Virus record (IMG/VR): IMGVR_UViG_3300028394_002328
Coordinates: 124,001-188,000 of that record
DNA length: 64,000 nucleotides
Reading direction: 5' to 3' (one strand)
Both the position numbers and the translations under genes were made by a program. This document shows, in pieces, positions 7,018-27,711 of this stretch. Below the pieces are notes generated by a model. It was not told the DNA's origin and made no database searches. It worked only from the letters and a program-made list of their open reading frames with translations. How positions within the stretch are numbered: the stretch's first letter is position 1; every line of letters starts with the position of its first letter.

Positions 7018-9414
7018 ATGGACATGAAAGATTTATTATCAAAAATGGCTCAGCTTAATGAGGCTAAAGAAGCAAGCTATTCACCATCATACCGTGTAGG
7101 TAAGACTGGTGATTTTAGTGATAAGCCTAATATGAAAAGAGGCACACCAGTTGCTGGTAAAATAGGTAAGTATGGAAAAACATCAGATGAGTTAGGTGAT
7201 CCTGATCAAGATCCTGATGATGATACCTCTTCTAGCGCAGAGAAGCGTGGTCGTGGTCGTCCCAAGAAAGCAGGTGGAGAAGCATATACTAAAGATAGAT
7301 ACTCTGGTGCAAAAGACCTACAAAGTGTTATGATTGGTAAAATGCCTAAATCATTACCAGGTAAAAAAGGTACAGTACATAAATCTCCTCAAGATAAAGA
7401 AGAAGGCGCTACTAAAAAGAAAAGTTTAAAAGATTGGGTTGAAAGAGTAGAAAGCGTATTAGCAGAAAATACTGCTACCACAACATCAACTGCTACTGCA
7501 CCTAGTCCTTCACAGAAAGTAATGGTAAAGCCAGGCCAGCCTGCTGGACAAAAGCCTCCTGCAACAATGACTACACAAACAGGTCAAACTATTGCTGTAG
7601 GTTCAGCAGACCAAGTTAAAAAATTAGGTGATTTAGTTAACACAGGGCAAGTACAATTAACAAAGCCTGGTACAACTCAGCCACTAGATGAAGAAGATAT
7701 GGAAGAAGGTAATGAAAAGTGGATCAAAGGCGCTATCAAGCATCCAGGTGCTTTCACTAAAAAAGCAAAATCACATGGAATGAGTACATCTTCATTTGCT
7801 AGTAAAGTATTATCTAATAAAGAAGATTATCCTGCTAGTACTGAAAAGCAAGCAAATCTTGCAAAAACTTTAGGTAAGTTCCGTAAAAAAACTGACGAGG
7901 CTGATATTCCTCCAAATGACAGTTTAATGAGTCCTATTAGCGAAGCAAAGAAAAAAGCCGATGCAGCAGCAAAGAAAGATGATAAGGCTGAAAAAGCAGG
8001 CAAGAAAGTAGCTAAAGATATTGAGTATGATGAAAAAGTAAAAGATAGCATACATGGTAAAAAGCGCAGTGCTGAGGATAATAAAGCAGAACGTGCGGGT
8101 AAAAAAGTTGCTAAGGACATTGAATACGATATGAAAAAGAAAACAGTTAAAGAAGCCGCTAAGCCAGATTTCCCTGATATTGACAATGACGGCAATACAA
8201 AAGAATCTATGAAAAAGGCTGCAGCCGACAAGAAAAAGAAGGCTGTTAAAGAAGGTAGAGACCATCACTTAAAAGCAGCCTATCATGAAGGTAAGGCACA
8301 TGGTTTAAGCAAACAAGCATATAACTGTCGCCATGATGATATGGAAGAAGCAAGACAGTATCATGAAGGTTACAAGTGTGGTCTTGATGAGTGCTATGGT
8401 CAACAACCTATTTTAGGTTATGTCGGTGAAGAATCACAACATGATGTAGTTGACACAATGGCTAGTTACGGTGCTCATGGATTAGAAGAAGATGATATGA
8501 TGGAAGTTGGTCGTGGTGAATACATGAAGCAACAAGCCCGTAAGCCAGGCGATACATTCAAAGCGTTTGGTCAAACTTTCAAAGATAGCGATGTACTAGA
8601 TGAATTTGCTTTTGAATCATGGGATAAGCAATTAACTGCTATCTTAGAAGGTAAAGAAGTAAATGAAGGTATGACTGTTTCTATCTCTAAAGGTCATCAA
8701 GGTTCCCCTGATTCAGTAAGCGTATCAGCACAAGATGGCGAAGCCGACCAGTTGTTAGGCTTAATCAAATCAGCAGGCTTAGGTTTGTTTGGTGGAGATG
8801 AAAGCAAAGGGTTCGCACCCGGTGAAGAAACTCCTAGAACAGCACCAGGTGGTATTGAAGTAGTTGATGATCATGATGGTATGATGGCATTAATGAAAAA
8901 ATTAACTGGCGGTGACACGTCAGGTAGTGATGGAGATTACGAAGAAGAACAAGGTCATACCGATCACGACCATGGAGATCATGAAGAAGAGTGTAATGAG
9001 TGTGGTTACATGGAAAGCGATTGCCAGTGTGATGACAAAGAAATGGTTGATGAAGTAGAATCAGAAGACCAAATGACTTACAATGTAGCAGAAGATAATC
9101 CTCCTGATTCAGGCGCAGCAGAAACAACTGCTGATGAAAATGCTGAAGCAGCGGAAGATCAGGCAATTGCAACAGACGATGAATTTCAAAATGTCAATGA
9201 ATGGGCTAATCAAGTTGGTGGAGGTCCAGGCAAAGGGACAGATGCAGGATTTGAGCAAGATATTGCGTTTATGACTAAAGTTATTTCAGGTGGCTTGAAT
9301 AAGCAAAAATCAACTGGTCAGACAACTATCCCAGTGATTGCTCATCAGGGGCAGCGTACTGGTGTTAATGAAAATTTTGTGGCTGATTGGAAGAAATTAG
9401 CAGGAATAAAGTAA
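7018..9414 (+). CDS. Large charged low-complexity protein, putative prohead core/internal protein
   Basis: 798 aa, Lys/Glu/Asp-rich, many [LIVM]-x-E motifs, AT-hook KRGRGRPKK, DxDxDG motif, His/Cys cluster, ends DWKKLAGIK. Confidence 0.65.
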   Translation: MDMKDLLSKMAQLNEAKEASYSPSYRVGKTGDFSDKPNMKRGTPVAGKIGKYGKTSDELGDPDQDPDDDTSSSAEKRGRGRPKKAGGEAYTKDRYSGAKDLQSVMIGKMPKSLPGKKGTVHKSPQDKEEGATKKKSLKDWVERVESVLAENTATTTSTATAPSPSQKVMVKPGQPAGQKPPATMTTQTGQTIAVGSADQVKKLGDLVNTGQVQLTKPGTTQPLDEEDMEEGNEKWIKGAIKHPGAFTKKAKSHGMSTSSFASKVLSNKEDYPASTEKQANLAKTLGKFRKKTDEADIPPNDSLMSPISEAKKKADAAAKKDDKAEKAGKKVAKDIEYDEKVKDSIHGKKRSAEDNKAERAGKKVAKDIEYDMKKKTVKEAAKPDFPDIDNDGNTKESMKKAAADKKKKAVKEGRDHHLKAAYHEGKAHGLSKQAYNCRHDDMEEARQYHEGYKCGLDECYGQQPILGYVGEESQHDVVDTMASYGAHGLEEDDMMEVGRGEYMKQQARKPGDTFKAFGQTFKDSDVLDEFAFESWDKQLTAILEGKEVNEGMTVSISKGHQGSPDSVSVSAQDGEADQLLGLIKSAGLGLFGGDESKGFAPGEETPRTAPGGIEVVDDHDGMMALMKKLTGGDTSGSDGDYEEEQGHTDHDHGDHEEECNECGYMESDCQCDDKEMVDEVESEDQMTYNVAEDNPPDSGAAETTADENAEAAEDQAIATDDEFQNVNEWANQVGGGPGKGTDAGFEQDIAFMTKVISGGLNKQKSTGQTTIPVIAHQGQRTGVNENFVADWKKLAGIK

Positions 9415-9428
9415 AAGCAACTGATAAG

Positions 9429-9457
9429 AAATACCCAGCTTAGCTGGGTATTTTTTT
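9429..9457 (+). terminator. Rho-independent terminator
   Basis: AAATACCCAGC-TTA-GCTGGGTATTT followed by a T-run. Confidence 0.9.
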
Positions 9458-9483
9458 GGCTATGGCGTTCTTTATCTCAAAAC

Positions 9484-9496
9484 GATAAATACTAGA
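9484..9496 (+). promoter_or_regulatory. Late promoter, extended GATAAATACTAGA copy 2
   Basis: Between the terminator and the ATG at 9516. Confidence 0.75.
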
Positions 9497-9515
9497 ATAA
9501 AGAGGTAATGATAGG

Positions 9516-12500
9516 ATGAGCCAGCAGAATATAGACTTTGGTACGTTTCCTGACGATCCGGATGCGGATGCGATAAGAACGGCCTTTCAAAAAGTACAAG
9601 AAAACTTTACAGAAATTTATTCAGGCCTACAAGGCGCAGCGGTTTCATCAATCAATAGGACTCCTGGAGCTGGTATAACAGTAAGTAGTCCAACTGGTAA
9701 TGTTATCGTTACTGCTAACATTGCCTGCGTTCAAGTTCACACAAGCACACTAAGCATAGGTCGTGATGCTAATGGTAGTCAAGATACCTCTATTACTTCT
9801 AGCTCTCAGACTCTATGGGTTGACCTACCTACTACTATTTCTAACGTTACTAATATTATATTATCTGGTAATGCTTCAATAGGTGGAAATTTATTAGTAA
9901 ATGGTTTTTCTAATTTAGCTAATATTATAGCCACTGGATATGCTAACATAGGTAGTAATCTTACGGTCACTGGAAATATATCTTCAAATGCAATCTCTGC
10001 AACGGGTAATATTAGCACAACTGCTAATCTTAGTGGAGCAAACATTAGCAGTACAGGGACATTGACAGTATCCGGTAACGTTAATTTTACTGGCACAAGT
10101 AATGTTACATTAGGTAGTACATCTAACATACACATGTCTGGTGGAACTAGCGGATATATATTACAGACTGATGGTTCAGGAAATTTATCTTGGATTAATC
10201 CAAGTTCAGCAGTTGGGTCGGGAACATCAGGTACAAGTGGATATACAGGTATAAGTGGTTATAGTGGTATCAGCGGGTACACAGGAGTTTCAGGATATAC
10301 CGGTGTTAGTGGTGTTTCAGGTACATCGGGATATTCAGGTGTTTCAGGTACAAGCGGATACAGTGGATATACTGGTTATTCAGGTGCAGTAGGAACATCA
10401 GGAACTAGTGGATACACCGGAACATCAGGTACAAGTGGATATACCGGTGTTTCAGGATATACTGGAACGTCAGGCTTTACAGGAATCAGTGGATACTCAG
10501 GCACTTCAGGATATACTGGAACATCGGGTACATCGGGTACATCAGGTACTAGTGGATACTCAGGTACAAGTGGTACATCAGGTACATCAGGTACGAGTGG
10601 ATACACCGGTACATCAGGTACATCAGGTACGAGTGGATATACCGGTACATCAGGATATTCAGGTACTAGCGGTATTAGTGGTTACACGGGGGCAAGCGGT
10701 ACATCAGGCATCAGTGGATATACAGGTACTTCAGGAACTTCGGGATACTCAGGAACTTCGGGCTATTCAGGAACAAGTGGTATAAGTGGACATTCAGGCA
10801 TCAGTGGTTACACGGGGGCAAGCGGTACATCAGGCATCAGTGGATATACAGGTACTTCAGGATATACTGGAACGTCAGGCTATACAGGTGTCAGTGGATA
10901 CTCAGGCACAAGTGGTATATCAGGTTATACAGGAGATAGTGGTACATCGGGGATATCTGGTTATACTGGCACATCAGGTACTTCAGGGATATCTGGTTAT
11001 ACTGGTGCAATCGGTACATCAGGGTATACTGGTATCAGTGGTTACACCGGGGTCAGTGGTTATACTGGGGTCAGTGGTTACACAGGAACATCAGGTATAT
11101 CAGGTTATACAGGAGCTAGTGGTACATCGGGGATATCTGGTTATACTGGCACATCAGGTACTTCAGGGATATCTGGTTATACTGGTGCAAGCGGTACATC
11201 TGGGCATTCTGGGGTCAGTGGTTATACCGGCGTAAGTGGTTATACTGGGGTCAGTGGTTACACAGGAACATCAGGTATATCAGGTTATACAGGAGCTAGT
11301 GGTACATCGGGGATATCAGGATATACTGGTGCATCTGGACATTCTGGTATATCAGGTTATACCGGTGCTAGTGGCACATCGGGTATATCAGGGTATACTG
11401 GTATCAGTGGTTACACCGGGGTCAGTGGTTATACTGGGGTCAGTGGTTATACTGGAACATCAGGTATATCAGGTTATACAGGAGCTAGTGGTACATCGGG
11501 TACTAGTGGATATTCTGGTATTAGTGGTTATTCAGGGACAAGCGGTACATCAGGTGCAAGTGGTATTTCGGGTTATACTGGAACATCAGGTATATCAGGA
11601 TACACCGGAGCAAGTGGTACATCGGGAATATCAGGATATACTGGAACAAGTGGTACATCGGGATATTCAGGAACTTCTGGATATTCAGGAACTTCCGGGG
11701 CAAGTGGCACATCAGGGATTAGTGGTTATACAGGAGCTAGTGGTACATCGGGTATCAGTGGTTATACTGGTGTTTCAGGTTATACTGGTGTTTCAGGCTA
11801 CACAGGAACTTCCGGGGCAAGTGGCACATCAGGGATTAGTGGTTATACTGGAACAAGTGGTACATCAGGGATTAGTGGTTATACTGGAACAAGTGGTACA
11901 TCGGGTATCAGTGGTTATACTGGAACAAGTGGTACATCAGGGATTAGTGGATATACTGGTGTCAGTGGATACACCGGTACAAGCGGAACATCTGGTATAA
12001 GTGGTTATTCAGGTTCAGGCATCAGCGGCTACTCAGGTACAAGTGGCACATCAGGTACAAGCGGTACGACAGGAATTAGTGGATATACCGGTGTCAGCGG
12101 ATATACTGGAGTAAGTGGCACATCTGGTATAAGTGGTTATACGGGAGATAGTGGTACATCAGGTATCAGTGGCTACTCAGGAACAAGTGGTACATCAGGT
12201 ATCAGTGGATATACCGGTACTAGTGGTACATCAGGTATCAGTGGCTACTCAGGAACAAGTGGTACATCAGGTATTAGTGGATACACCGGTATTAGTGGAT
12301 ACACCGGTATTAGTGGTACATCAGGTGTCAGTGGTTATACTGGCGTAAGTGGATACACAGGCGTAAGTGGATACACAGGCGTAAGTGGATATTCAGGATC
12401 AGGCGTAAGTGGCTACTCAGGTACATCAGGTATCAGTGGTACATCAGGTAGAAGCGGATACTCAGGTCAATCAGTCGCTATTCAAGGTTCAGTTGCGAAC

Positions 12501-15500
12501 TCTACTTTATTACCATCTGGTCAACCTGCAGGATATTTATATATCGTTCTAGCTGCTGGTGGTGGATATAATGCAGGTGATGGTGCATTAAGTAATGGCG
12601 ATAACACATATACCAATATTGGACCACTTCAAGGTCCATCAGGATTCTCAGGTGTAAGTGGTTATTCAGGATCAGGTATAAGTGGTTATACTGGTACAAG
12701 CGGATATACTGGTACATCAGGAACAAGTGGTTACACTGGAACAAGTGGTACATCAGGTATCAGTGGATATTCAGGTAGTAGCGGGTATTATGGTCAAGAC
12801 GGAACAAGTGGATATTCAGGAACAAGTGGCTACTCAGGTACTTCAGGAGTAAGTGGGTATACTGGTACATCAGGTACAAGCGGATATACTGGTGCTAGTG
12901 GTACCTCAGGTACAAGCGGATATACTGGTACAAGCGGATATACTGGTACAAGCGGATATACTGGTACATCAGGAACAAGTGGTTATACAGGCACTTCAGG
13001 AATAAGTGGAACATCAGGAATAAGCGGTACATCAGGCATAAGCGGGTACACTGGTACAAGTGGTACATCAGGTATCAGTGGTACATCAGGTATCAGTGGA
13101 TACTCAGGATCAGGTATTAGTGGTTATTCGGGTACAAGTGGTTACACAGGTACTTCAGGCATAAGTGGTTACACAGGTACTTCAGGCATAAGCGGCACAT
13201 CAGGCATAAGTGGATATACTGGAACAAGCGGCTACTCAGGTACTTCAGGCATAAGTGGAACATCAGGCATAAGTGGAACATCAGGCATAAGTGGTTATAC
13301 TGGTGTTAGTGGTTATTCAGGTACATCAGGAATAAGTGGTTATACAGGTGTAAGTGGAGAATCTGGTATAAGCGGATATAGTGGTACTTCAGGTATAAGC
13401 GGTACATCGGGTATCAGTGGATATACAGGAGTAAGTGGATATTCAGGTGCATCGGGCGCATCAGGTACTAGCGGATACACTGGTACAAGTGGTACAAGTG
13501 GTACAAGTGGATATACAGGAGTAAGTGGATACAGTGGTACATCAGGTTTAAGCGGTTATAGTAGTTCTAGCGGTGTTAGTGGATACAGCGGTGCCTCAGG
13601 TACTAGTGGTAAACAAGGTACATCAAGTAGTTACTTCAATTATCTTGCTGATACTAGTACACAAAGTGCGCCTCCTGCAACTGGGGATATTATTTGGAAC
13701 AATAGTACACAAACTAGTGCTACTCAGATATATGTAAACCATGTTACTTCAGATGGAGTAGATATTGAGATATTCTTAGCATTACTAAGTCAAACAGAAT
13801 TAATTACTTTACAAGATGCTGCCGAAAGTAATAATTATCAAATATTTGAAATCAATGGTACTCCTACAAATAATACAACTTATTGGACACTTCCAGTAGT
13901 ATCAACAGGTTCGGGAGGAACAGGTTCTACTAATTTTGGTAATAATTTACCTCTAATCTTAGCATTAACTAATGGTGTTAGTGGATTCTCGGGAGCATCA
14001 GGTAGCAGTGGTTATTCAGGAACTTCAGGGTATACTGGTGTAAGTGGATACACAGGTGTCAGTGGATATACTGGTACATCGGGTATAAGTGGATACACAG
14101 GGGTAAGTGGTTATACTGGTGTTAGTGGCTACTCAGGTACATCAGGTATAAGCGGTACATCAGGTATAAGCGGTACATCAGGTATAAGCGGTACATCAGG
14201 TATAAGTGGTGCATCAGGTATAAGTGGCTATACTGGAACAAGTGGATATACTGGTACATCAGGTATTAGTGGTTACACTGGAACATCAGGTATAAGCGGA
14301 ACATCAGGTATAAGTGGATACACTGGAACAAGTGGATACTCAGGCACATCAGGTACTAGTGGCACATCGGGTATAAGCGGTACTTCAGGAATAAGCGGCT
14401 ACTCAGGATCAGGTATTAGTGGATATACTGGTACATCAGGTATAAGTGGATACACTGGTGTTAGTGGATATACAGGTGTAAGTGGATACTCAGGTACATC
14501 AGGAATAAGTGGTTACACTGGTACAAGTGGCACATCAGGTATCAGTGGTACATCAGGTATCAGTGGTACATCAGGTATCAGTGGATACTCAGGATCAGGT
14601 ATAAGCGGATATACTGGTACATCAGGGATAAGTGGTTACACTGGTGTTAGTGGTTACACTGGTGTTAGTGGATATACAGGGGTAAGTGGATACACTGGTG
14701 TTTCAGGTGTAAGTGGTTACACTGGTACAAGTGGTACATCTGGTATCAGTGGATACACCGGCACATCAGGGAGAAGTGGATACTCAGGTACTTCAGGCAT
14801 AAGTGGATACACAGGTATATCAGGATATACAGGCGTAAGTGGTACATCAGGTATCAGTGGATATACTGGGGTCAGTGGGTACACCGGAATAAGTGGATAC
14901 ACAGGTGTCAGTGGATACTCAGGTAATGCAGGTGTAAGCGGATACTCAGGATCAGGTGTAAGTGGATATTCTGGTACATCAGGATACAGCGGTGTTGCAG
15001 GTACGTCAACATCACTCAACGCAACAAATGATACAACAACTAACCCATTATACCCAGTAATGGTTGCCGCTGCAGGAAGCACTCAAACAGTAAAAGTAAG
15101 TACTAGTGGTCTAGCGTTTAATGCTAGTAGTAATGTTCTCACTGTTGGTAGCGGTACAGGTGGTAATATTACTGGTTCTAACGTAATAAGTGCTAACACC
15201 TTTATCGGTACCCTTGCTAATGGTAATAGTAACGTTTATATTGCTACAGCAAACGGTAACGTGACAATAGCAGCGGTTGGTAATACTACATTGACAATTA
15301 CTGGTACTGGTGCAAATATCAGCGGTACAGCAAATATTTCAGGTAATGCTAACGTTGGTAATATTGGAACTGCTCAAGTACTTGCTTCAGCAAACGTTAC
15401 TTCACCTCAACTAATATCAAACATAGCAACCGGTACTGCGCCGTTAGTAGTAACAAGTACAACTCGTGTTTCTAATCTTAGTGTTGCTTATGCTAACGTT

Positions 15501-17378
15501 TCGGACTATAGTACTATTACTACAGCATCTACAGGTAACTATTATGTTAACTTTACTAATGCATTAACAGGTAACGTACAAATGAACGCTAACGCTGCGT
15601 TCGTTGCAAACACAAGTAATGGTGCATTATACGCAACTACATTTGTTGGTAATCTATATGGTATTTTAGCCAACGGTAATAGTAATGTCAACATTGCAAC
15701 TGCAAACGGCAATGTCACAATAGCGGCTGTTGGTAATACTACATTGACAATTACTGGTACTGGAGCAAATATTAGTGGTACAGCAAATATTTCAGGTAAT
15801 GCTAACACTGGTAACTTAGGTACAACAACATTAATTGCTACAACAGGTAATATTACTACAGTTAATGGTAACATAGCAAACGCTTCTACTATCATTGCTA
15901 ATGCAGCAAACGGAACTGTATTTGCAAATAACTATACAGCATCAGGTGCTGCTACAGGTAATGCCAATGTATCAACTATAACAGGTAATTTGGGTATTCG
16001 TGCAATATTCTCTACCTATACAGATAATTCAGCAGCAGCCAGTGCTACTATCGCTAATGCAGCAATACACGCAATAGCAGCACCAAACTTAGCAGCAGCA
16101 AATGCTACTGTTACATTTACTAACGCAGCAACGTTTTATATTGCAGGTGCGCCAGTTGCTAATACAAATGCTACAATTACTAATCCATATTCATTATTTG
16201 TAGCAGCAGGTAATAGTTATCTTGCAGGTAACGTTACTTTTGCAGGTAACTTAATCGGTATTCATGCAAATGGTAATAGTAACGTCAATATACCTGCCGC
16301 TAATGGAAACGTTAATATAAGTGCAGCAGGTAATGCTAATGTGTTCGTTGTAACCGGCACTGGTGCTAATATCACCGGTACAGCAAATATTTCAGGTAAT
16401 GCTAACGTAGGTAGCTTAGGCTTTGGTAGTGGTGTAATTACTGGTACCGGCAACATTACTGGTGGTAACTTAATTGGTATTATCGCTGCTGGGTCAAATA
16501 CAATTACTACTACTGGTAATATTACTGGTGGTAACTTGATTGGTATTCACGCAAACGGTAATAGTAATGTTAATATACCTGCTGCTAACGGAAACGTTAA
16601 TATAAGTGCGGTTGGTAATGCTAATGTGCTAGTTGTAACTGGAACTGGTGCAAACATCACTGGTACTGCTAACATCACTGGTAATACTAACGTTGGTAAT
16701 ATTACAGTAGGCTCTGGAACCGGTGGTAATATTACTGGAGCAAACTTAGTAAGTGCTAATTATTTTACTGGTACATTTATTAATGGTAACAGCAACATAT
16801 CTATTGTAGCAAATGCCAATATTAATTTATCAGCAGTTGGTAATGCTAATGTGTTCGTTGTAACCGGCACTGGTGCTAATATCACCGGTACAGCAAATAT
16901 TTCAGGTAATGCGAACGTCGGTAACTTAGGCTTTGGTAGTGGGGTAATTACTGGTACAGGTAATATAACTGGCGGTAATTTAATTGGTATCGTGGCTGCT
17001 GGTAGTAATACTATTAGTACTACTGGTAATATATCAGCAGGTAATGTAACAGTAACATCATATCACATACGTTCAGTTGGTACTGCAATATCAGCAGCAG
17101 GTTCTACTCAAGGTACTGCTACAGCATTGACTAAAGAGATGAACATTGTTTCTACTGTTCTATCTGGCAATGGTGTAGTATTACCAACAGCAGTAGCTGG
17201 TATGGTATTAACTATTACTAATAGTAGTGCAAACAGTTTATTAGTATACCCTGCAACTGGGGCAGCAATTAATGCACTAGCAGCCAATGCAGGATTGACG
17301 CAAGTTGCGAACGCAACAATACAATTTATTGCACCAACTACAACTCAGTGGTATACAGTAGGCGCTACATACGCATAA
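9516..17378 (+). CDS. Giant fibre protein: gp9/gp10-like N-terminal anchor, Gly-X-Ser/Thr repeat, Asn/Gly-rich shaft
   Basis: N-terminus QNIDFGTFPDDPDADAIRTAFQKVQENFTEIY matches the T4 gp9/gp10 N-terminal pattern (IxxG...DG.GD.LR.AF.K.N.NF.E.Y); three Gly-X-Y blocks; C-terminal GNI/NGNSNV fibre repeats. Confidence 0.85.
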   Translation: MSQQNIDFGTFPDDPDADAIRTAFQKVQENFTEIYSGLQGAAVSSINRTPGAGITVSSPTGNVIVTANIACVQVHTSTLSIGRDANGSQDTSITSSSQTLWVDLPTTISNVTNIILSGNASIGGNLLVNGFSNLANIIATGYANIGSNLTVTGNISSNAISATGNISTTANLSGANISSTGTLTVSGNVNFTGTSNVTLGSTSNIHMSGGTSGYILQTDGSGNLSWINPSSAVGSGTSGTSGYTGISGYSGISGYTGVSGYTGVSGVSGTSGYSGVSGTSGYSGYTGYSGAVGTSGTSGYTGTSGTSGYTGVSGYTGTSGFTGISGYSGTSGYTGTSGTSGTSGTSGYSGTSGTSGTSGTSGYTGTSGTSGTSGYTGTSGYSGTSGISGYTGASGTSGISGYTGTSGTSGYSGTSGYSGTSGISGHSGISGYTGASGTSGISGYTGTSGYTGTSGYTGVSGYSGTSGISGYTGDSGTSGISGYTGTSGTSGISGYTGAIGTSGYTGISGYTGVSGYTGVSGYTGTSGISGYTGASGTSGISGYTGTSGTSGISGYTGASGTSGHSGVSGYTGVSGYTGVSGYTGTSGISGYTGASGTSGISGYTGASGHSGISGYTGASGTSGISGYTGISGYTGVSGYTGVSGYTGTSGISGYTGASGTSGTSGYSGISGYSGTSGTSGASGISGYTGTSGISGYTGASGTSGISGYTGTSGTSGYSGTSGYSGTSGASGTSGISGYTGASGTSGISGYTGVSGYTGVSGYTGTSGASGTSGISGYTGTSGTSGISGYTGTSGTSGISGYTGTSGTSGISGYTGVSGYTGTSGTSGISGYSGSGISGYSGTSGTSGTSGTTGISGYTGVSGYTGVSGTSGISGYTGDSGTSGISGYSGTSGTSGISGYTGTSGTSGISGYSGTSGTSGISGYTGISGYTGISGTSGVSGYTGVSGYTGVSGYTGVSGYSGSGVSGYSGTSGISGTSGRSGYSGQSVAIQGSVANSTLLPSGQPAGYLYIVLAAGGGYNAGDGALSNGDNTYTNIGPLQGPSGFSGVSGYSGSGISGYTGTSGYTGTSGTSGYTGTSGTSGISGYSGSSGYYGQDGTSGYSGTSGYSGTSGVSGYTGTSGTSGYTGASGTSGTSGYTGTSGYTGTSGYTGTSGTSGYTGTSGISGTSGISGTSGISGYTGTSGTSGISGTSGISGYSGSGISGYSGTSGYTGTSGISGYTGTSGISGTSGISGYTGTSGYSGTSGISGTSGISGTSGISGYTGVSGYSGTSGISGYTGVSGESGISGYSGTSGISGTSGISGYTGVSGYSGASGASGTSGYTGTSGTSGTSGYTGVSGYSGTSGLSGYSSSSGVSGYSGASGTSGKQGTSSSYFNYLADTSTQSAPPATGDIIWNNSTQTSATQIYVNHVTSDGVDIEIFLALLSQTELITLQDAAESNNYQIFEINGTPTNNTTYWTLPVVSTGSGGTGSTNFGNNLPLILALTNGVSGFSGASGSSGYSGTSGYTGVSGYTGVSGYTGTSGISGYTGVSGYTGVSGYSGTSGISGTSGISGTSGISGTSGISGASGISGYTGTSGYTGTSGISGYTGTSGISGTSGISGYTGTSGYSGTSGTSGTSGISGTSGISGYSGSGISGYTGTSGISGYTGVSGYTGVSGYSGTSGISGYTGTSGTSGISGTSGISGTSGISGYSGSGISGYTGTSGISGYTGVSGYTGVSGYTGVSGYTGVSGVSGYTGTSGTSGISGYTGTSGRSGYSGTSGISGYTGISGYTGVSGTSGISGYTGVSGYTGISGYTGVSGYSGNAGVSGYSGSGVSGYSGTSGYSGVAGTSTSLNATNDTTTNPLYPVMVAAAGSTQTVKVSTSGLAFNASSNVLTVGSGTGGNITGSNVISANTFIGTLANGNSNVYIATANGNVTIAAVGNTTLTITGTGANISGTANISGNANVGNIGTAQVLASANVTSPQLISNIATGTAPLVVTSTTRVSNLSVAYANVSDYSTITTASTGNYYVNFTNALTGNVQMNANAAFVANTSNGALYATTFVGNLYGILANGNSNVNIATANGNVTIAAVGNTTLTITGTGANISGTANISGNANTGNLGTTTLIATTGNITTVNGNIANASTIIANAANGTVFANNYTASGAATGNANVSTITGNLGIRAIFSTYTDNSAAASATIANAAIHAIAAPNLAAANATVTFTNAATFYIAGAPVANTNATITNPYSLFVAAGNSYLAGNVTFAGNLIGIHANGNSNVNIPAANGNVNISAAGNANVFVVTGTGANITGTANISGNANVGSLGFGSGVITGTGNITGGNLIGIIAAGSNTITTTGNITGGNLIGIHANGNSNVNIPAANGNVNISAVGNANVLVVTGTGANITGTANITGNTNVGNITVGSGTGGNITGANLVSANYFTGTFINGNSNISIVANANINLSAVGNANVFVVTGTGANITGTANISGNANVGNLGFGSGVITGTGNITGGNLIGIVAAGSNTISTTGNISAGNVTVTSYHIRSVGTAISAAGSTQGTATALTKEMNIVSTVLSGNGVVLPTAVAGMVLTITNSSANSLLVYPATGAAINALAANAGLTQVANATIQFIAPTTTQWYTVGATYA
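10221..15008 (+). repeat. 9-bp-period Gly-X-(Ser/Thr) coding repeat in three blocks (10221-12473, 12633-13625, 13974-15008)
   Basis: Triplets GTS, GYT, GYS, GIS, GVS, GAS; about 751+331+345 aa by coordinate count. Confidence 0.95.
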
Positions 17379-17387
17379 GGAAATATT

Positions 17388-18008
17388 ATGATAACATTAG
17401 ATATATTAAGAGCAATTTGTCCAAAAACAAAACCTGCAATTTTAGAAAATTACGTTGAACCGATTAACACAGTGGGTCAATATTATGAAATGTTTGACAA
17501 CCCAAAAAGAATAGCAGGGTTTTTAGCACAAGTAGCACACGAATCAGGTGGGTTTACTGCTATAAAAGAAAATTTAAATTATAGTGCTAAAGGGTTGATG
17601 ACTACTTTCAAAAAATACTTCCCCGATGAAGCTACTGCAAAGCAATACGAGAAGAAACCAGAAAAGATTGCTAATCGTGTATATGCTAACAGAATGAAAA
17701 ATGGTTCTGAAGAATCAGGTGATGGATATCGTTTTTGTGGGCGTGGATTAATACAGTTAACAGGAAGAGATAATTATACTAAGTTTGCACAGGCACTGGA
17801 CATGAGTATTGATGATACAGTAGCCTATTTAGAAACTCCAAACGGCGCATTAGTTAGTGCAGCATGGTTTTGGGATAATAATAAATTAAATCAATATTGC
17901 GACCGTGATGATTTTGTTACATTGACTAAAAGAATTAATGGCGGAACTATTGGATTGGAAGATAGAAAGCATCATTATCAAATTGCATTGAATTTGCTTC
18001 AAGGGTAA
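17388..18008 (+). CDS. Glycoside hydrolase family 19 (chitinase/lysozyme-like) lysin
   Basis: AGFLAQVAHESGGF, ENLNYS, GDGYRFCGRGLIQLTGRDNY, SAAWFW, TKRINGG.GLEDR. Confidence 0.93.
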   Translation: MITLDILRAICPKTKPAILENYVEPINTVGQYYEMFDNPKRIAGFLAQVAHESGGFTAIKENLNYSAKGLMTTFKKYFPDEATAKQYEKKPEKIANRVYANRMKNGSEESGDGYRFCGRGLIQLTGRDNYTKFAQALDMSIDDTVAYLETPNGALVSAAWFWDNNKLNQYCDRDDFVTLTKRINGGTIGLEDRKHHYQIALNLLQG

Positions 18009-18009
18009 A

Positions 18010-20529
18010 ATGGCACAACCAATTTGGACTACACCAGCAGGAACTTTAGGAACTTTCCCATCGGGAATTTCTACTATTACGCAATTAATAGCCACACCAG
18101 TGGCTCCTGCCACCAGTGTAACTTATACATTACTAAGTGCTATTTTACCGGCAGGATTATCAATTGATATCCTAGGAACAATCTACGGTACACCTTCATT
18201 AGTAACACAAGAAACTACATCAACTTTTACTATAAGAGCCACTGATAATTTAGGAAACATAAGAGATAGAACATTTTCAATGACTATCTCTGGCACTGCA
18301 ATACCATCTTTTGTCACCCCATCTGGTAGTATTTTAACGTCAAACGACAGTGTGTGGATAGAACTTCAAATTGAATATGCTAATCCTGATTCAGAGAATC
18401 CTGTAACTATTTCATTGATAGAGGGAGCGCTGCCCGTAGGACTAGAAATTAATCAAACTGGATTAATAAGAGGATATGCTGAACCACCTACAGCGTCAGT
18501 GACATTACCTGAAGTTGTTACAGCGGCAACTGTAACAGAAACTACTAATATAATTACATGTTTAACTACAACAGGATTCGCTCTTGGTAGACCAGTCGTG
18601 TTTACCGGGGCCTCGGTATTTGGTGGTTTAGAAGCAGGTATTACTTATTATATTAAAAGTATCATAGATAGTACTACTTTTACAATAAGTACTACTCAAA
18701 ACGGTCCTACATTAGCGCTTGCTAGTGGTACAGGATTTATGACAGTTACATTGCCTACACTTTCAATTGGACAACCAACTATTAGGTCATATGTTTTTAC
18801 ATTAACATTAAACAGTCCATTAGGAGGAGATTCAGGGTCATATAGTATGACTATCATAAATCAGAATACTCCCATAAGTCAAGGTGGTCCAGGCTTTCCT
18901 GCAAATAGCAGAACACCTACAATATATAATACTAGACCACAATCATTTAACATAACTGATGCTGATCCATATTATGGATATTATGTATTACCGCCGATAG
19001 ATAGTGGATATAATGATACATATCCCCCAAGTTCACTGGCATTTATTGGAACTATCCAAAGTGATAATTATTTTGCATTTAAGATAATTGGACATGATTT
19101 TGATGGCAATGGTATTACTTATGTATACTCAGAGTTACCATCTGCACTTACCGGTGACAGTGCAACAGGTTGGATAACAGGTACTCCTTCGATATCAACT
19201 GAAGGTATTAACCAATTTAATTTTGGTGTTGCTGTTTATAAAACAGCCAACCCAACAATACAAACACCCTTTTTTAACTTCTCATTTAATTTAGCAAATG
19301 CAATAACAGGTGTTATTACATGGGTTACTCCTAGTAATTTAGGAACTATTTTTAATGGTACTGTAAGTACAAAAGGTGTATCAGCGACAGCAGATGTTGC
19401 ATTACAATTTAGGGTTATAGACGGGGAATTGCCCCCGAATTTAACACTTTTGTCTAATGGACAAATAACTGGGTATGTAGCAGATCAACCTACCGCTAAT
19501 TTATTAGAACAAGGTGATAACACAGTATTTACCTTTACAATACAAGCATACTCACCAATTTATCCTATAGTATTTTCTAATAGAACCTTTACATTAACTG
19601 TATTGCAAGAATTTAGTCAACCTACTGATACATTGTACATAAAAGCTACTCCTAGTATACAAGATAGAGTTATGATTGATTCTTTATTGAATGATGATAC
19701 ACTAATACCTTATGATTTATTATATCGTCCCAATGACATTTATTTTGGTAAAGCATCTAGTGTAATTTACGAACACGCATATGGTATATATGCTAGTGAT
19801 GTAGCTGAGTACATTGCGGCTGTAACTAGAAATCATTATTGGAGGAACATTACATTAGGCGAATTAAAAACTGCCATTGCAAGAGATGAGAATGGTAATA
19901 TAATTTATGAAGTAGTGTATAGTCAAGTTATAGATAATTTAGTTAACCCTAAGGGTGTTAGTGTGGCAAGTTCAATATATTGGCCAGTATTAATTGATTT
20001 AGGTCAAGGTCCATGGTATACTAGTGTAACAAATGTGTTTACCAGCTATGAAGATATATTAGGACAACTGTACTATACCAGCTTAACTCCAGGATACGCC
20101 CGTACATTATATCCAAATAGTTTATATAATATGCGTAACCGAGTAGCACAAGTATTGGGGCAAGAATATGATAGTAGATTGTTACCATTATGGATGACTA
20201 GTCAACAAATAGATGGTAGTACATTGGGGTATACTCAAGCTTGGGTAATATGTTATACTCAACCGGGTGGTGCAGAAATTATAAAAAATAATATTAATAA
20301 TAATTGGACACAGGCTGATGGTTTGCCATATACATTAAATATGATTAATTTTAGAATTGATAGATTTAGTGTAGACAAGAGTATGACATATAACTATGAT
20401 AATAGGTTAGTACCGCCCACGTGGACTGGTTTACCTAGTGGAACACCTGTTCCCGATCCTGTTGATAGTAAAGATTTTTATGTACTATTCCCCCGTCAAA
20501 CAATTTTACCTGACGAATCTCAGTACTAA
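18010..20529 (+). CDS. Virion structural protein with putative-Ig (He_PIG-like) repeats, probable baseplate component
   Basis: Repeated W.TP.G.LG..LP.GL.I...G.I.GTP...FTIRATD units; small beta module (TGFALGRPVVF..TYYIKS..TTFTIS) shared with the next gene. Confidence 0.7.
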   Translation: MAQPIWTTPAGTLGTFPSGISTITQLIATPVAPATSVTYTLLSAILPAGLSIDILGTIYGTPSLVTQETTSTFTIRATDNLGNIRDRTFSMTISGTAIPSFVTPSGSILTSNDSVWIELQIEYANPDSENPVTISLIEGALPVGLEINQTGLIRGYAEPPTASVTLPEVVTAATVTETTNIITCLTTTGFALGRPVVFTGASVFGGLEAGITYYIKSIIDSTTFTISTTQNGPTLALASGTGFMTVTLPTLSIGQPTIRSYVFTLTLNSPLGGDSGSYSMTIINQNTPISQGGPGFPANSRTPTIYNTRPQSFNITDADPYYGYYVLPPIDSGYNDTYPPSSLAFIGTIQSDNYFAFKIIGHDFDGNGITYVYSELPSALTGDSATGWITGTPSISTEGINQFNFGVAVYKTANPTIQTPFFNFSFNLANAITGVITWVTPSNLGTIFNGTVSTKGVSATADVALQFRVIDGELPPNLTLLSNGQITGYVADQPTANLLEQGDNTVFTFTIQAYSPIYPIVFSNRTFTLTVLQEFSQPTDTLYIKATPSIQDRVMIDSLLNDDTLIPYDLLYRPNDIYFGKASSVIYEHAYGIYASDVAEYIAAVTRNHYWRNITLGELKTAIARDENGNIIYEVVYSQVIDNLVNPKGVSVASSIYWPVLIDLGQGPWYTSVTNVFTSYEDILGQLYYTSLTPGYARTLYPNSLYNMRNRVAQVLGQEYDSRLLPLWMTSQQIDGSTLGYTQAWVICYTQPGGAEIIKNNINNNWTQADGLPYTLNMINFRIDRFSVDKSMTYNYDNRLVPPTWTGLPSGTPVPDPVDSKDFYVLFPRQTILPDESQY

Positions 20530-20532
20530 ATA
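20527..20532 (+). promoter_or_regulatory. Late promoter core overlapping stop codon
   Basis: TAAATA built on the TAA stop at 20527-20529. Confidence 0.55.
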
Positions 20533-20549
20533 CTATATGGAAATGAATT

Positions 20550-21824
20550 ATGAGTAGCGCAATTAATACAAACGGAATAGATGTTAATTATCCTACACCC
20601 GGGCAGAATAATAGTAGCCAAGGGTTTAGGAATAATTTCAATGCTATAAAAACTAATATTGATACCGCCGGTACGGAGATCACTGATTTACAAAACAAAG
20701 TTGTTGTCAAGTCCGCATTAAATAATACCACTGTAGACAATAACATGGCTAATACTTTGATTAGCAATGCCAGTACGAGAAGTTTTAGAGCAACTACTTT
20801 TAATTTGGGCAATAGCTTATCCGGCACAGTATTAGTTGATGTTTCATTAGGTGACGTACAATATGGTACTGTTACGGCTAATACTACCTTTCAATTTGGT
20901 AACTGGGCTCCTACTGGCACTCAGAGTAATGTTCAATTACAATTGGCAATTAGTAATGCAAATGCGGTAATCACTTGGCCTAGCGAAGTAGTAGTATCAA
21001 ATAACAATTTTGGTTTAACTAGTTTAGAAAATTATATTATTGGTACTTCAAATATTACTACCCCTTATAATGTATCTCAACTAGATTACAGATTAAGTAG
21101 TTTAGATTGCGGTAATACTATTACAATTGAACCATATAATAGACCAAGACAATCTACACAAATTCAACAAAGAAGTCCAGCACCAACTGGATTTCAAGGT
21201 GATGTAGCAGGAACAGTAGCAGTTGATCCTAGCGTTAATCAATTAACAATCACCGTTGCTAATACAGACCCATATCTTACAACTTCAGGCAATACTACAC
21301 AACTATATACTGATTTACCAATAGTATTTACCGGTACTTCACTTGCAGGTAATATCGTAGTAGGAACAACATATTATGTAAGAAATGTAGTGTCTAGTAC
21401 TACATTTACTGTGTCATCATCTATCGGTGGGGCTAATATTGCAATTGGGGCAAATGCTTCAGGCACTACAATGTTTGCTAATCCTGCAAGATACTTGTAT
21501 GTATCTACTGATGATTATAATTCTACAGTTTATAATAAAAATGTTGCAAACACTACAGTGACAACCAATGTGATAACATTAAACAATACCACTAGTCTAG
21601 TAGTTAATGCTCCAATCATTTTTACAGCAAATATTGCAGAAATAGTTGCAAATACAGTCTATTATATTAAAACTATATCTAGCCCGAATATAACTATTAG
21701 TCAATCTAGGACAAATGGTGTAGCAGGTACAACATTAACATTAAGTTCTAATGCTACTGCTACAACTGCTAACATATATGTAGGGTCTGATATTTGGCGA
21801 AGAATTCCTCTTAATTCATGGTAA
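20550..21824 (+). CDS. Virion structural protein
   Basis: N-terminal YP.PGQNNSSQGFRNNF.AIK coiled-coil anchor; two copies of the PIVFT..T.YY...TFT.S module; ends IWRRIPLNSW. Confidence 0.7.
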   Translation: MSSAINTNGIDVNYPTPGQNNSSQGFRNNFNAIKTNIDTAGTEITDLQNKVVVKSALNNTTVDNNMANTLISNASTRSFRATTFNLGNSLSGTVLVDVSLGDVQYGTVTANTTFQFGNWAPTGTQSNVQLQLAISNANAVITWPSEVVVSNNNFGLTSLENYIIGTSNITTPYNVSQLDYRLSSLDCGNTITIEPYNRPRQSTQIQQRSPAPTGFQGDVAGTVAVDPSVNQLTITVANTDPYLTTSGNTTQLYTDLPIVFTGTSLAGNIVVGTTYYVRNVVSSTTFTVSSSIGGANIAIGANASGTTMFANPARYLYVSTDDYNSTVYNKNVANTTVTTNVITLNNTTSLVVNAPIIFTANIAEIVANTVYYIKTISSPNITISQSRTNGVAGTTLTLSSNATATTANIYVGSDIWRRIPLNSW

Positions 21825-21828
21825 TTAA

Positions 21829-22065
21829 ATGCATCCATTCATAACTGATTTATCTGATAAAAAACTAGAAGACTTACAAACTACGATATCTGATCTCACT
21901 GGAAAATTAAATTTTGCTTATAGGACTGGAAATGGTCCATTAATTCATCAATTACAAATGGCAATCGGTAGTTATAAAGATGAATACCAAAAGAAAATGG
22001 ATGATCTCATAAAAAAACAAAATATTAGTTCAAAGATTGATATAAAGAAACAAAATGAGCGCTAG
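21829..22065 (+). CDS. Small hypothetical coiled-coil protein
   Basis: In-operon ORF overlapping the next start. Confidence 0.7.
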   Translation: MHPFITDLSDKKLEDLQTTISDLTGKLNFAYRTGNGPLIHQLQMAIGSYKDEYQKKMDDLIKKQNISSKIDIKKQNER

Positions 22066-22654
22066 AGTATCAAAAGATTTTGCCTTTCAAGCAGGATTAT
22101 ATTATGAAAATAAATTCCTAATTAATACCTATAATATTAGGCTTTATATGGAAGTAACGGTTGAAGATATATCAATACAAAATATCGCACTAGACCGTAT
22201 TAAGCATTTGTTTATCAATGGATTAGACAATTGTATTTTTGTACATGAAACTAATAAAACTGTAATTGAAAATTATATTAAAGCAGGATTAAGAGTTTGT
22301 ACATTGCCCGAAGAACCATATGATCAGATAATAGCTTTGGTGTTATTAAAAAAGATTAATACTATTACTGACAGTAAATTATATGTCACACAAATAAAAA
22401 TTTCATCATTAATATCCGATGATGTAGAGTTTTATGTTACCCATGATGAACATGTTGATTTTTGGAATAGAAATGTTTCTTGGTGGAATAATTCTGGACC
22501 CTGTATTACAGATTGGGCAAAGAAATTAAACAAAAAAGACAAAATAGTTGAACTTAAAAAAGATACCAATGATTGGATCGATTTGGGATTAGCTTGGAAG
22601 CAAAAAGACAGTTCTACTGACAACGAGATTGTTTTCTTGAATTTGGACAAGTAA
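22055..22654 (+). CDS. Hypothetical protein, faint QueD/T-fold resemblance
   Basis: LDNCIFV and PEEPYDQIIALVL echo QueD LDH.FL and .PTAENIA..; catalytic His residues absent. Confidence 0.55.
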   Translation: MSARVSKDFAFQAGLYYENKFLINTYNIRLYMEVTVEDISIQNIALDRIKHLFINGLDNCIFVHETNKTVIENYIKAGLRVCTLPEEPYDQIIALVLLKKINTITDSKLYVTQIKISSLISDDVEFYVTHDEHVDFWNRNVSWWNNSGPCITDWAKKLNKKDKIVELKKDTNDWIDLGLAWKQKDSSTDNEIVFLNLDK

Positions 22655-22657
22655 CTC

Positions 22658-22686
22658 TTGATATTTACCTTAAGAGGTGTTACAAT
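22658..22686 (+). promoter_or_regulatory. Sigma70-type promoter for the dnaE fragment
   Basis: TTGATA-N17-TACAAT with extended TG; ATG 5 nt downstream at 22692. Confidence 0.7.
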
Positions 22687-22691
22687 CAGTT

Positions 22692-23198: not shown

Positions 23199-23201
23199 AT
23201 A
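23196..23201 (+). promoter_or_regulatory. Late promoter core overlapping stop codon
   Basis: TAAATA on the TAA stop, followed by SD AGGAG. Confidence 0.55.
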
Positions 23202-23222
23202 TTCTATATAAGGAGTTTCATT

Positions 23223-24267: not shown

Positions 24268-24269
24268 TT

Positions 24270-26936: not shown

Positions 26937-26981
26937 CTTGATCTCCTTTGTTAGAGCTAAGAATGTAATCACATTCAAAAG

Positions 26982-27709: not shown

Positions 27710-27711
27710 TT

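What the first reader, a model, noticed from the sequence alone, without database searches (positions are those of the whole stretch)
9516..17378. Giant proline-free, nearly charge-free Gly-X-Ser/Thr fibre (~1430 repeat residues)
Seen: Gly at every third position with X mainly Tyr/Thr/Ile/Val/Ala and Y almost only Ser/Thr; essentially no Pro and very few charged residues; baseplate-type gp9/gp10 N-terminal anchor. Established: bacterial collagen-like proteins (e.g. streptococcal Scl2) rely on Pro and charge pairs for triple-helix stability; glycosylated Thr stabilises a vent-worm cuticle collagen; Gly-X-X repeats can instead form polyglycine-II bundles (snow flea antifreeze protein, S16 gp38). 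Inference: either a triple helix of about 400 nm (0.29 nm per residue) needing an unusual stabiliser such as O-glycosylation or Tyr stacking/cross-linking, or a very large PGII bundle with a flat hydroxyl face able to bind ice, mineral or polysaccharide.
Basis: partly seen in the sequence, partly recalled or inferred. Interest (0 to 1): 0.75.

Follow-up and report, generated by a model that had tools for sequence, protein, structure and literature searches.

The report
Giant proline-free collagen-like phage fibre
A 335-kb freshwater jumbo phage encodes a 2,620-residue tail-fibre protein whose middle 1,410 residues are a strict Gly-X-Y (collagen-type) repeat with almost no proline or charge. 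Related phages keep the same anchor and often the same tip but vary this stalk from about 110 to 490 triplets, so it looks like a length-adjustable tether built on a collagen recipe that has not been studied.

Summary
ORF 9516-17378 (+) encodes 2,620 aa with 470 Gly-X-Y triplets (1,410 aa) in three blocks. X is Thr/Tyr/Ile/Val/Ala and Y is Ser/Thr. There are 1 Pro and 7 charged residues, against 4.2% and 21.9% in the phage's other proteins.

The gene is real. A second assembly (335,035 bp, 95% complete) carries it unchanged. A 2022 strain differs by 30 synonymous and 10 conservative changes, never at Gly, and its indels keep the frame.

It lies in a conserved tail slot between a tape-measure-like gene and a GH19 lysozyme in a PA5oct/Rak2-type jumbo myovirus. 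Orthologues at this slot share the N-terminal anchor and often the tip, but carry 0 to 1,467 Gly-X-Y residues, all nearly Pro-free.

A 116-aa beta-sandwich that interrupts the repeat is predicted to trimerise. My best reading is a homotrimeric, kinked collagen-like triple helix of about 0.4 um that acts as an evolvable tether.

A polyglycine-II bundle is unlikely. Ice or mineral binding has no support. What stabilises the helix is unknown. Three GT2 glycosyltransferase genes sit beside the capsid gene, so glycosylation is possible but untested.

Collagen-like phage fibres are known; this composition is a new variant, and it is widespread in metagenomes.

The parts
9516..17378 (+). Whole fibre gene, 2,620 aa (P0001)
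   Evidence: Single ORF. It is identical in a second assembly, G001 133516-141378. Strain differences are 30 synonymous and 10 non-synonymous.
9516..9830 (+). N-terminal anchor, aa 1-105 (helix 15-40, then short strands); weakly gp9/gp10-like
   Evidence: phrog_677 at E 2e-5. PF07880 at 13.6 bits, below cut-off, and the only hit in the genome. Conserved at 48-70% identity in 398 IMG/VR relatives. AF2 model has pLDDT 73.
9831..10220 (+). N-proximal N/S/T/G-rich shaft, aa 106-235, ending in the junction motif GGTSGYILQTDGSGNLSW (aa 209-226)
   Evidence: Weak Bactofilin (beta-helix) hit at E 0.012, below cut-off. The motif recurs just before the repeat in paralogues P0122 and P0123 and inside many other fibre proteins.
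10221..12473 (+). Collagen-like block 1, aa 236-986 (runs of 200, 42 and 7 triplets, separated by two GSG one-residue interruptions)
   Evidence: Nested diverged DNA repeats.
12474..12632 (+). Insert 1, aa 987-1039, short non-collagenous segment
   Evidence: Weak similarity to the start of the Gly-rich domain of P0123. No family hit.
12633..13625 (+). Collagen-like block 2, aa 1040-1370
   Evidence: Pfam Collagen 28.6 bits at its start.
13626..13973 (+). Insert 2, aa 1371-1486: beta-sandwich node predicted to trimerise
   Evidence: AF2 pLDDT 93.7, pTM 0.87. Three-copy fold: score 0.58 against a best control of 0.00, with the confident contacts inside this domain. It is 75% identical to a copy in P0122. 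It matches 2,705 cluster representatives, and 98 of 219 instances are flanked by Gly-X-Y on both sides. No solved structure matches clearly.
13974..15008 (+). Collagen-like block 3, aa 1487-1831
   Evidence: Pfam Collagen 43.1 bits.
15009..16982 (+). Distal N/A/T/G-rich shaft, aa 1832-2489, with five copies of an approximately 50-aa unit (ANGNSNV..TGTGANISGTANISGNANVGN)
   Evidence: Shared with many fibre paralogues in the genome. No Pfam, NCBIfam or PDB hit.
16983..17375 (+). C-terminal tip, aa 2490-2620, presumed receptor-binding end
   Evidence: 48-74% identical in orthologues L020-L029, L067, L077 and L082. Its nearest Atlas clusters are all viral.

Best explanation
This is a homotrimeric tail fibre of an uncultivated freshwater jumbo myovirus of the PA5oct/Rak2 type. 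A short gp9/gp10-like N-terminus plugs it into the tail or baseplate. The distal N/A/T/G-rich shaft and the conserved C-terminal tip bind the host.

The 1,410 residues between them form a segmented collagen-like triple helix. It has three blocks, seven one-residue (Gly-Ser-Gly) kinks and two globular nodes. The nodes hold the three chains together and in register. At 0.286 nm per residue the helical part would be about 400 nm long, several times the tail.

I read its role as a long, flexible tether whose length can evolve, widening the capture radius in dilute lake water. The helix would be held without proline or salt bridges by three things: beta-branched or aromatic X residues, Ser/Thr hydroxyls at Y, and the trimeric nodes. 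O-glycosylation by the phage's own GT2 enzymes may add to this.

Shown: the sequence pattern, the constraint on it, the tail-module synteny and the variable stalk length. Predicted: trimerisation of the node. Inferred: the triple helix itself, the baseplate attachment, the tether role and the stabilising interactions.
For: 1. Pattern. There are 470 triplets, 1 Pro and 7 charged residues, and runs of up to 200 triplets. Pfam Collagen passes its cut-off.

2. Constraint.
- A 2022 strain differs by 30 synonymous and 10 conservative changes, and no Gly is replaced.
- Its indels are a 9-nt insertion, deletions summing to 9 nt, or compensating +1/-1 pairs.
- Tyr triplets avoid each other, 2 seen against about 45 expected.

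3. Reality of the gene.
- It is identical in a 335,035-bp assembly that differs from this record elsewhere (99.93% identity).
- The phage is present in lake metagenomes from 2017 to 2025.

4. Context.
- Sheath, two tube genes, two small genes, a tape-measure-like gene, the fibre, a GH19 lysozyme and a He_PIG protein lie in that order.
- The same order holds in 13 related contigs.
- The capsid is a T4-type gp23 and the portal is T4-type.
- The capsid protein is 63-67% identical to those of Vibrio phage 2.275.O, PA5oct, Phosso and E. coli phage A4.

5. Spacer behaviour.
- Positional orthologues carry 0, 201, 336-468, 762, 1,170-1,254, 1,410 or 1,467 Gly-X-Y residues, with 1-11 Pro each.
- Many share the tip at 48-74% identity.
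- The closest relative (neighbouring genes 74-94% identical at the protein level, most 84-94%) has a 1,283-aa version.

6. Trimer. Three copies of aa 1330-1530 scored 0.58, against a best of 0.00 in 3 controls. That mark was reached by 21 of 30 proteins solved as pairs of one chain and by 0 of 23 solved as single chains; the calibration used two copies, not three. The confident contacts are at residues 1373, 1409-1420, 1431-1441 and 1481-1483.

7. Family.
- The same Pro-poor Gly-[Tyr/Phe/Ile/Val/Thr]-Ser stalks occur in hundreds of metagenomic proteins.
- These proteins also carry phage-fibre domains (Peptidase_S74, Mtd_N, BclA_C, CBM_5_12).
- One sits in a podovirus-like tail module.

8. The insert-2 fold recurs in Atlas clusters that carry Collagen plus T4_gp9_10_N.
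Against: No tool here could fold or measure the repeat itself. The confident contacts in the complex prediction lie in the node, not in the Gly-X-Y arms.

By the host-guest peptide scale, Tyr at X and Ser at Y are among the least favourable residues for a triple helix. That ranking is from my memory of Persikov et al. 2000. The reviews I read say only that any replacement of Pro or Hyp lowers Tm, and that charge pairs stabilise. A stable helix of this composition is therefore not expected from known rules.

The N-terminal anchor assignment is weak: PF07880 is below cut-off and there is no structural match. Virion association has not been shown. The exact length of the repeat rests on short-read assemblies.
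Confidence: 0.6

Rival explanations
1. The three chains are joined at the anchor and the nodes, but the Gly-X-Y stretches are flexible and largely unfolded. They would act as an entropic tether. The triplet period would then be a by-product of expanding 9/18/36-nt DNA repeats, not of a triple helix.
For: The DNA is a nest of tandem repeats with periods of 9 to 180 nt. The composition lacks every known triple-helix stabiliser (reviews). The complex prediction gave no confident contacts in the arms.
Against: A disordered linker does not need Gly at every third residue. Yet the period is kept over 336-1,467 residues in orthologues whose X/Y residues have diverged into two different compositions. 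No Gly is replaced among 40 strain differences, and indels keep the triplet frame. X and Y follow a tight grammar.
Confidence: 0.15
2. The repeat folds back on itself into a large polyglycine-II bundle, like the snow-flea antifreeze protein or the S16 gp38 adhesin. This would give a flat hydroxyl-rich face that binds ice, mineral or polysaccharide.
For: It has a period of three with Gly, and Ser/Thr-rich positions that could line one face. The outward face of such a bundle could in principle carry bulky residues.
Against: Gly makes up only 33% of the repeat. 58% of X positions are Tyr/Ile/Val. Runs of up to 600 residues contain no turn-like break. The flanking anchor and node are of trimeric type and would hold the chains parallel. 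Orthologues vary the repeat from 112 to 489 triplets between the same anchor and tip; that fits a linear spacer better than a compact domain.
Confidence: 0.04
3. The fold is the same collagen-like trimer, but the protein is not a baseplate side fibre. It could be a central tail-tip fibre, a neck or head whisker, or a hair-like decoration.
For: The gene follows the tape-measure-like gene directly and precedes a tail lysozyme. In many phages that position holds hub or tip proteins. The gp9/gp10 similarity is below cut-off. The genome has about 15 further fibre or adhesin genes that could be the side fibres.
Against: phrog_677 and PF07880 both place their N-terminal region on aa 1-102 and 3-53. 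Atlas clusters join Collagen with T4_gp9_10_N.
Confidence: 0.2

Closest known systems
Collagen-like repeats in phage tail fibres (Smith et al. 1998 'Bacteriophage collagen', cited in PMC1079782; Prochlorococcus phage P-SSM2 orf028; EHEC prophage collagen-like proteins, PMC3368898)
   Same: Gly-X-Y runs lie inside trimeric phage fibre proteins, between non-collagenous domains. P-SSM2 orf028 is 49% Gly-X-Y, with Pro, Ser or Thr often at X and Y.
   Different: Here Pro is essentially absent (1 in 1,410) and so is charge. X is aromatic or beta-branched and Y is 75% Ser. The length is 470 triplets. I found no paper describing this composition, but the library is incomplete.
Bacterial collagen-like proteins Scl2 (Streptococcus) and BclA (Bacillus)
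   Same: Gly-X-Y triple helix without hydroxyproline, nucleated by an adjacent globular trimerisation domain. Thr is frequent at Y. The PDB sequence search picked up BclA weakly.
   Different: Scl2 relies on many charged and polar residues and a hydration network. Across bacterial collagens Pro fills 19-31% of X and Thr 32-48% of Y. This fibre has neither Pro nor charges, and Ser rather than Thr dominates Y.
T4 gp9 / gp10 baseplate proteins (PF07880 T4_gp9_10_N)
   Same: The first 50-100 residues resemble the shared N-terminal segment. Both are trimeric proteins of the tail module.
   Different: The score is below the family cut-off. The rest of the protein is unrelated. The gene order differs from T4.
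Polyglycine-II bundles (snow-flea antifreeze protein; S16 gp38 adhesin tip)
   Same: A three-residue period with Gly.
   Different: Those are short, Gly-richer, small-residue helices joined by turns into a compact sandwich. Here there are no turns, X is bulky, the runs reach 600 residues and the flanks are trimeric.
Glycosylated collagens (vent-worm cuticle collagen with galactosylated Thr; BclA; Mimivirus fibril collagens) - from memory, not tested
   Same: Ser/Thr-rich Y positions that could carry O-glycans. The phage encodes GT2 enzymes beside its capsid gene.
   Different: There is no evidence that this fibre is glycosylated. The GT2 genes lie about 180 kb from the fibre gene.

Membership tests
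Collagen-like proteins (PF01391, triple-helix repeat) | Gly at every third residue over long uninterrupted runs | tested here: met
   470 triplets; the longest run is 200 triplets.
Collagen-like proteins (PF01391, triple-helix repeat) | Profile match above Pfam's gathering score | tested here: met
   28.6 and 43.1 bits against a cut-off of 27.2, on two pieces that include the repeat.
Collagen-like proteins (PF01391, triple-helix repeat) | Usual stabilisers: Pro/Hyp at X/Y, or charge pairs | tested here: not met
   1 Pro and 7 D/E/K/R in 1,410 residues. The phage's other proteins have 4.2% and 21.9%.
Collagen-like proteins (PF01391, triple-helix repeat) | Adjacent trimerisation domain that sets the chain register | tested here: inconclusive
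   Three copies of aa 1330-1530 scored 0.58, against a best control of 0.00. That mark was reached by 21 of 30 proteins solved as pairs of one chain and by 0 of 23 solved as single chains. Contacts lie in insert 2. This is a prediction only.
Collagen-like proteins (PF01391, triple-helix repeat) | Triple-helical conformation (CD, protease resistance, 0.29 nm rise) | not testable with these tools
   Needs recombinant protein or virions.
T4 gp9/gp10-like baseplate proteins (PF07880) | N-terminal domain match above cut-off | tested here: not met
   13.6 bits against 25, E 0.012, aa 3-53; it is the only hit in the 335-kb genome. phrog_677 at E 2e-5 on aa 1-102.
T4 gp9/gp10-like baseplate proteins (PF07880) | Fold of the N-terminal domain resembles solved gp9/gp10 | tested here: not met
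   Foldseek against PDB gave nothing at E <= 0.001. The monomer model is of moderate quality, pLDDT 73.
Phage tail fibre (functional class) | Encoded in the tail module at a conserved position | tested here: met
   The order sheath, tube, tape-measure-like gene, fibre, GH19 lysozyme holds in 13 related contigs.
Phage tail fibre (functional class) | Conserved anchor, variable shaft, exchangeable distal end | tested here: met
   The anchor is 48-70% identical in relatives. The stalk ranges from 0 to 1,467 Gly-X-Y residues. The tip is shared by some orthologues and replaced in the closest one.
Phage tail fibre (functional class) | Present in the virion | not testable with these tools
   There is no isolate and no proteome.
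Polyglycine-II bundle proteins | Short Gly-rich helices of small residues joined by turns | tested here: not met
   Gly is 33% of the repeat, 58% of X is Tyr/Ile/Val, and there are no breaks in runs of up to 600 residues.

The most novel reading that the evidence does not exclude
Phages use a second, so far unstudied recipe for the collagen triple helix: no proline, no charge pairs, aromatic or beta-branched residues at X and Ser/Thr at Y, possibly O-glycosylated. This recipe is stable enough to build fibres of 0.1 to 0.4 um, and their length is tuned by gaining or losing triplets. If so, the sequence rules for triple-helix stability derived from animal and streptococcal collagens are incomplete.
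Probability: 0.35. Interest if true: 0.8.

Novelty: new variant of a known kind. Interest (0 to 1): 0.6.

Why it matters
Collagen stability rules come from Pro/Hyp-rich animal collagens and from charge-rich streptococcal ones. A natural, strongly constrained Gly-X-Y family with neither feature, found in hundreds of phage fibres, gives a direct test of whether other side-chain codes can hold a triple helix. The candidates are hydroxyl networks, Tyr packing and glycans. Such a code would also offer Pro-free designs that can be expressed in bacteria.

For phage biology, one conserved tail slot holds stalks from 0 to about 490 triplets. Closely related phages differ two-fold in length. This points to fibre length as an evolvable trait, possibly linked to capsule or sheath thickness or to encounter rate in dilute water. 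A fibre of about 0.4-0.5 um would be several times longer than the tail.

Tried and rejected
**Searches of the cultured-phage collection**
- A megablast and two tblastn searches found nothing. The low-complexity filter probably masks the repeat.
- Only the tail tube and capsid genes gave relatives.

**Sequence and fold searches**
- The PDB sequence search with the repeat returned animal collagens, on Gly periodicity alone. This is not informative.
- A lead from PDB entry 8zxl ('spindle/axial fibril') gave no relevant paper.
- The N-terminal AF2 model found no fold match.
- Insert 2 found no clear solved relative: Foldseek best E 0.085, VIA-align Z 6.4.
- NCBIfam gave nothing.
- The Atlas search with the C-terminal tip returned only unnamed viral clusters.

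**A conclusion I withdrew**
- The first homologue search suggested that no N-terminal relative carries Gly-X-Y.
- This was wrong. It was an effect of candidate selection, and the IMG/VR loci overturned it.

**Other dead ends**
- Cluster look-ups gave no names.
- The 346-kb contig behind P0143 could not be searched as a genome.
- Synteny with PA5oct stops after the tube genes, so it does not assign the fibre's position in the virion.
- The literature search on phage virion glycosylation gave nothing usable.
- Across 104 related stalks, aromatic triplets are not generally kept apart: 1,426 observed against 1,702 expected. The Tyr spacing rule therefore holds for this protein and some relatives only.

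**Limits of the read data**
- Short-read contigs cannot confirm the order of the repeat pieces. The many 'joints' come from repeats and paralogues.
- The metatranscriptome run holds low-depth pieces of the gene, but that does not show transcription.

**Genes not found**
- No tRNA genes in the window.
- No GT2 gene in the 88-kb record itself.
Full report
**1.

Window 9516..17378 (+) is one ORF of 2,620 aa. Runs of five or more Gly-X-Y triplets add up to 1,410 residues (470 triplets). They form three blocks, aa 236-986, 1040-1370 and 1487-1831, and the longest unbroken run has 200 triplets.

X is Thr 151, Tyr 147, Ile 79, Val 46 and Ala 21. Y is Ser 353 and Thr 103. The runs hold one Pro and seven charged residues. 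The phage's non-fibre proteins have 4.2% Pro and 21.9% D/E/K/R.

Six triplets (GTS, GYT, GIS, GYS, GVS, GAS) make up 93% of the repeat. Thr at Y occurs almost only after Tyr. Tyr triplets almost never touch: 2 seen, about 45 expected.

Seven interruptions all read GYS-GS-G[IV]S, which is one residue short of a triplet. Pfam Collagen passes its cut-off on pieces that include the repeat.

**2. The gene is real and under constraint**

The window is part of an 88-kb IMG/VR record. A second record of 335,035 bp, judged 95% complete, is the same phage. It is 99.93% identical over 87.7 kb and carries the identical 2,620-aa gene.

The phage's DNA is in lake and freshwater runs from 2017 to 2025. A 2022 strain differs from the window at 40 listed sites in the gene. 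Thirty are synonymous and ten are conservative (I/V, S/T, F/Y and similar), and none replaces a Gly. Its indels are a 9-nt insertion, deletions summing to 9 nt, or compensating +1/-1 pairs.

The out-of-frame ORFs listed inside the repeat are by-products of the repeat. One caveat applies: short-read contigs break within the repeat, so the exact copy number rests on two assemblies that agree.

**3. What surrounds it**

The order of genes is:
- tail sheath (PF17482);
- two tail-tube genes;
- two small genes;
- a 798-aa highly charged gene that I call tape-measure-like by position only;
- the fibre;
- a GH19 or tail-lysozyme-like gene;
- a He_PIG Ig-domain protein.

Further on lie about 15 fibre or adhesin genes with Gly_rich_2, FN3, He_PIG, Laminin_G_3 and Peptidase_S74 domains. 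Two of them (P0122 and P0123) carry the same repeat. P0122 also carries the same inserted domain.

The full genome has T4-type gp23 capsid, portal and gp15 genes. Its capsid protein is 63-67% identical to those of Vibrio phage 2.275.O, PA5oct, Phosso and E. coli phage A4. The phage is therefore a jumbo myovirus of the PA5oct/Rak2 group. Genome GC is 37% and the host is unknown.

**4. Orthologues show what the repeat is for**

Thirteen related IMG/VR contigs keep the same gene order around this slot. All their fibre genes begin with the same anchor (MxQxNIDFG.FPDDP.ADAIRTAF.K.Q.NF).

The stalk, however, ranges over 0, 201, 336-468, 762, 1,170-1,254, 1,410 and 1,467 Gly-X-Y residues. This protein is therefore not the longest. 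The closest relative, whose neighbouring genes are 74-94% identical at the protein level (most 84-94%), has a 1,283-aa version with 762 repeat residues and a different distal end. More distant relatives keep the same C-terminal tip at 48-74% identity.

All stalks are nearly Pro-free, with 1-11 Pro each. They fall into two compositions:
- X = Thr/Phe/Tyr/Trp/Ile/Val with Y = Ser;
- X = Ala/Ser/Tyr/Thr with Y = Thr/Ile.

A conserved anchor and tip joined by a Gly-X-Y segment of freely varying length is how a linear spacer behaves. It is not how a compact domain behaves.

**5. Trimer evidence**

The 116-aa insert 2 (aa 1371-1486) folds with high confidence as a beta-sandwich (pLDDT 93.7).

Three copies of aa 1330-1530 gave a score of 0.58, against a best of 0.00 in 3 controls. 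That mark was reached by 21 of 30 proteins solved as pairs of one chain and by 0 of 23 solved as single chains; the calibration used two copies rather than three. The confident contacts lie inside the insert.

The domain has 2,705 relatives among cluster representatives. Of 219 instances in the best 150 proteins, 98 are flanked on both sides by Gly-X-Y. Its fold matches Atlas clusters of phage proteins with Collagen and T4_gp9_10_N domains at TM 0.84-0.93. No solved structure matches clearly.

The prediction says nothing confident about the arms themselves.

**6. The anchor**

phrog_677 (baseplate wedge tail fibre connector) matches aa 1-102 at E 2e-5. PF07880 T4_gp9_10_N matches aa 3-53 at 13.6 bits. 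That is below its cut-off, but it is the only match in 335 kb. PDB sequence and fold searches found nothing. I treat baseplate attachment as likely but not shown.

**7. Most likely mechanism**

My reading is a homotrimeric fibre whose middle part is a segmented collagen-like triple helix. It would be about 400 nm long at 0.286 nm per residue (an established value). The Gly-Ser-Gly sites would act as kinks and the two nodes would keep the register. The whole would serve as a long flexible tether between anchor and receptor-binding end.

What stabilises it is open. Known bacterial collagens use Pro at X (19-31%), Thr at Y (32-48%) and charged or polar hydration networks. Peptide work shows that any replacement of Pro or Hyp lowers Tm, and that charge pairs compensate. 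From memory, Tyr at X and Ser at Y rank near the bottom of that scale.

The candidates are Ser/Thr hydroxyl and water networks, interchain packing of spaced Tyr/Ile/Val, nucleation by the nodes, low lake temperature, and O-glycosylation. The genome has three GT2 genes and methyltransferases (one with an FkbM domain) directly next to the capsid gene. A related 346-kb contig has a 1,706-aa multi-GT2 gene 4 kb from a collagen-like fibre gene. These findings make glycosylation plausible, nothing more.

**8. Rivals**

- **Disordered tether.** This fits the lack of stabilisers and the repeat DNA. It does not explain why Gly is kept at every third place across diverged orthologues and strains.
- **Polyglycine-II bundle.** This is disfavoured by the bulky X residues, the lack of turns and the spacer-like length variation.
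- **Other position on the virion.** A tip, neck or head location cannot be excluded.

**9. How new it is**

Collagen-like repeats in phage fibres have been known since 1998, and P-SSM2 orf028 is 49% Gly-X-Y. The Pro-free, charge-poor, aromatic/beta-branched-Ser composition is what stands out.

It is not rare. A word-seeded search found 630 proteins of 472-1,503 aa. In 70 of 122 examined, Pro is below 1% of the repeat, and pooled Y is 72% Ser. Other giants of 2,600-4,070 aa exist. One example sits in a podovirus-like tail module. These searches were seeded with this composition, so they show that it exists, not how frequent it is.

I found no paper on this composition, but the library is incomplete. 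My verdict is a new variant of a known kind, of moderate to high interest.

Noticed in passing
window 52765-57792 (+): A second giant collagen-like fibre (P0122, 1,675 aa, 867 Gly-X-Y residues). It has the same triplet composition, the same junction motif, and a copy of insert 2 that is 75% identical. It also carries two copies of a further module (GGTLTSTVDNFTG.GSQTAFTLS..).
   Followed up: partly
window 37450-52738 (+): A row of seven fibre or adhesin genes with Gly_rich_2 domains, FN3, He_PIG and TIG domains. Several have short Gly-X-Y runs, and P0123 (44066-46645) has 273 repeat residues. Together with 28646-37438 and 57762-59570 this is an unusually large adhesin arsenal.
   Followed up: partly
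window 60283-64000 (+) and beyond: A carbonic-anhydrase-like gene (60283-61227), a full DnaJ (61263-62066) and a ClpB-like two-AAA chaperone (62087-64351) lie directly after the fibre cluster. Phage-encoded chaperones next to giant fibres may help fold them; I did not test this.
   Followed up: no
window 24270-24947 (+): A Bax1-I (BI-1/YccA-type) membrane protein encoded by the phage, E 6.5e-50. It is followed by a clamp-loader-like AAA gene.
   Followed up: no
G001 320166-325688 (loci L114/L115): Three GT2 glycosyltransferase genes lie immediately beside the gp23 capsid gene. One is fused to two methyltransferase domains, including an FkbM domain, and a further methyltransferase gene lies alongside. 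This suggests that virion proteins are glycosylated.
   Followed up: partly
G001 8717-27751 (+) and 57810-64706 (+): Other giant ORFs in the same phage, of 6,344 aa and 2,298 aa, without Gly-X-Y runs. Not examined.
   Followed up: no
L014 16524-21644 (346-kb ENA contig): A 1,706-aa protein with several GT2 and methyltransferase domains, 4 kb downstream of a collagen-like fibre gene (P0143) that also holds an insert-2 domain. Two radical-SAM genes lie upstream.
   Followed up: no
window 10408-12000 (+), other frames: ORFs of 125-254 aa in another frame inside the repeat. They are open only because the codons are repetitive. The synonymous-site pattern supports the 9516 frame.
   Followed up: yes
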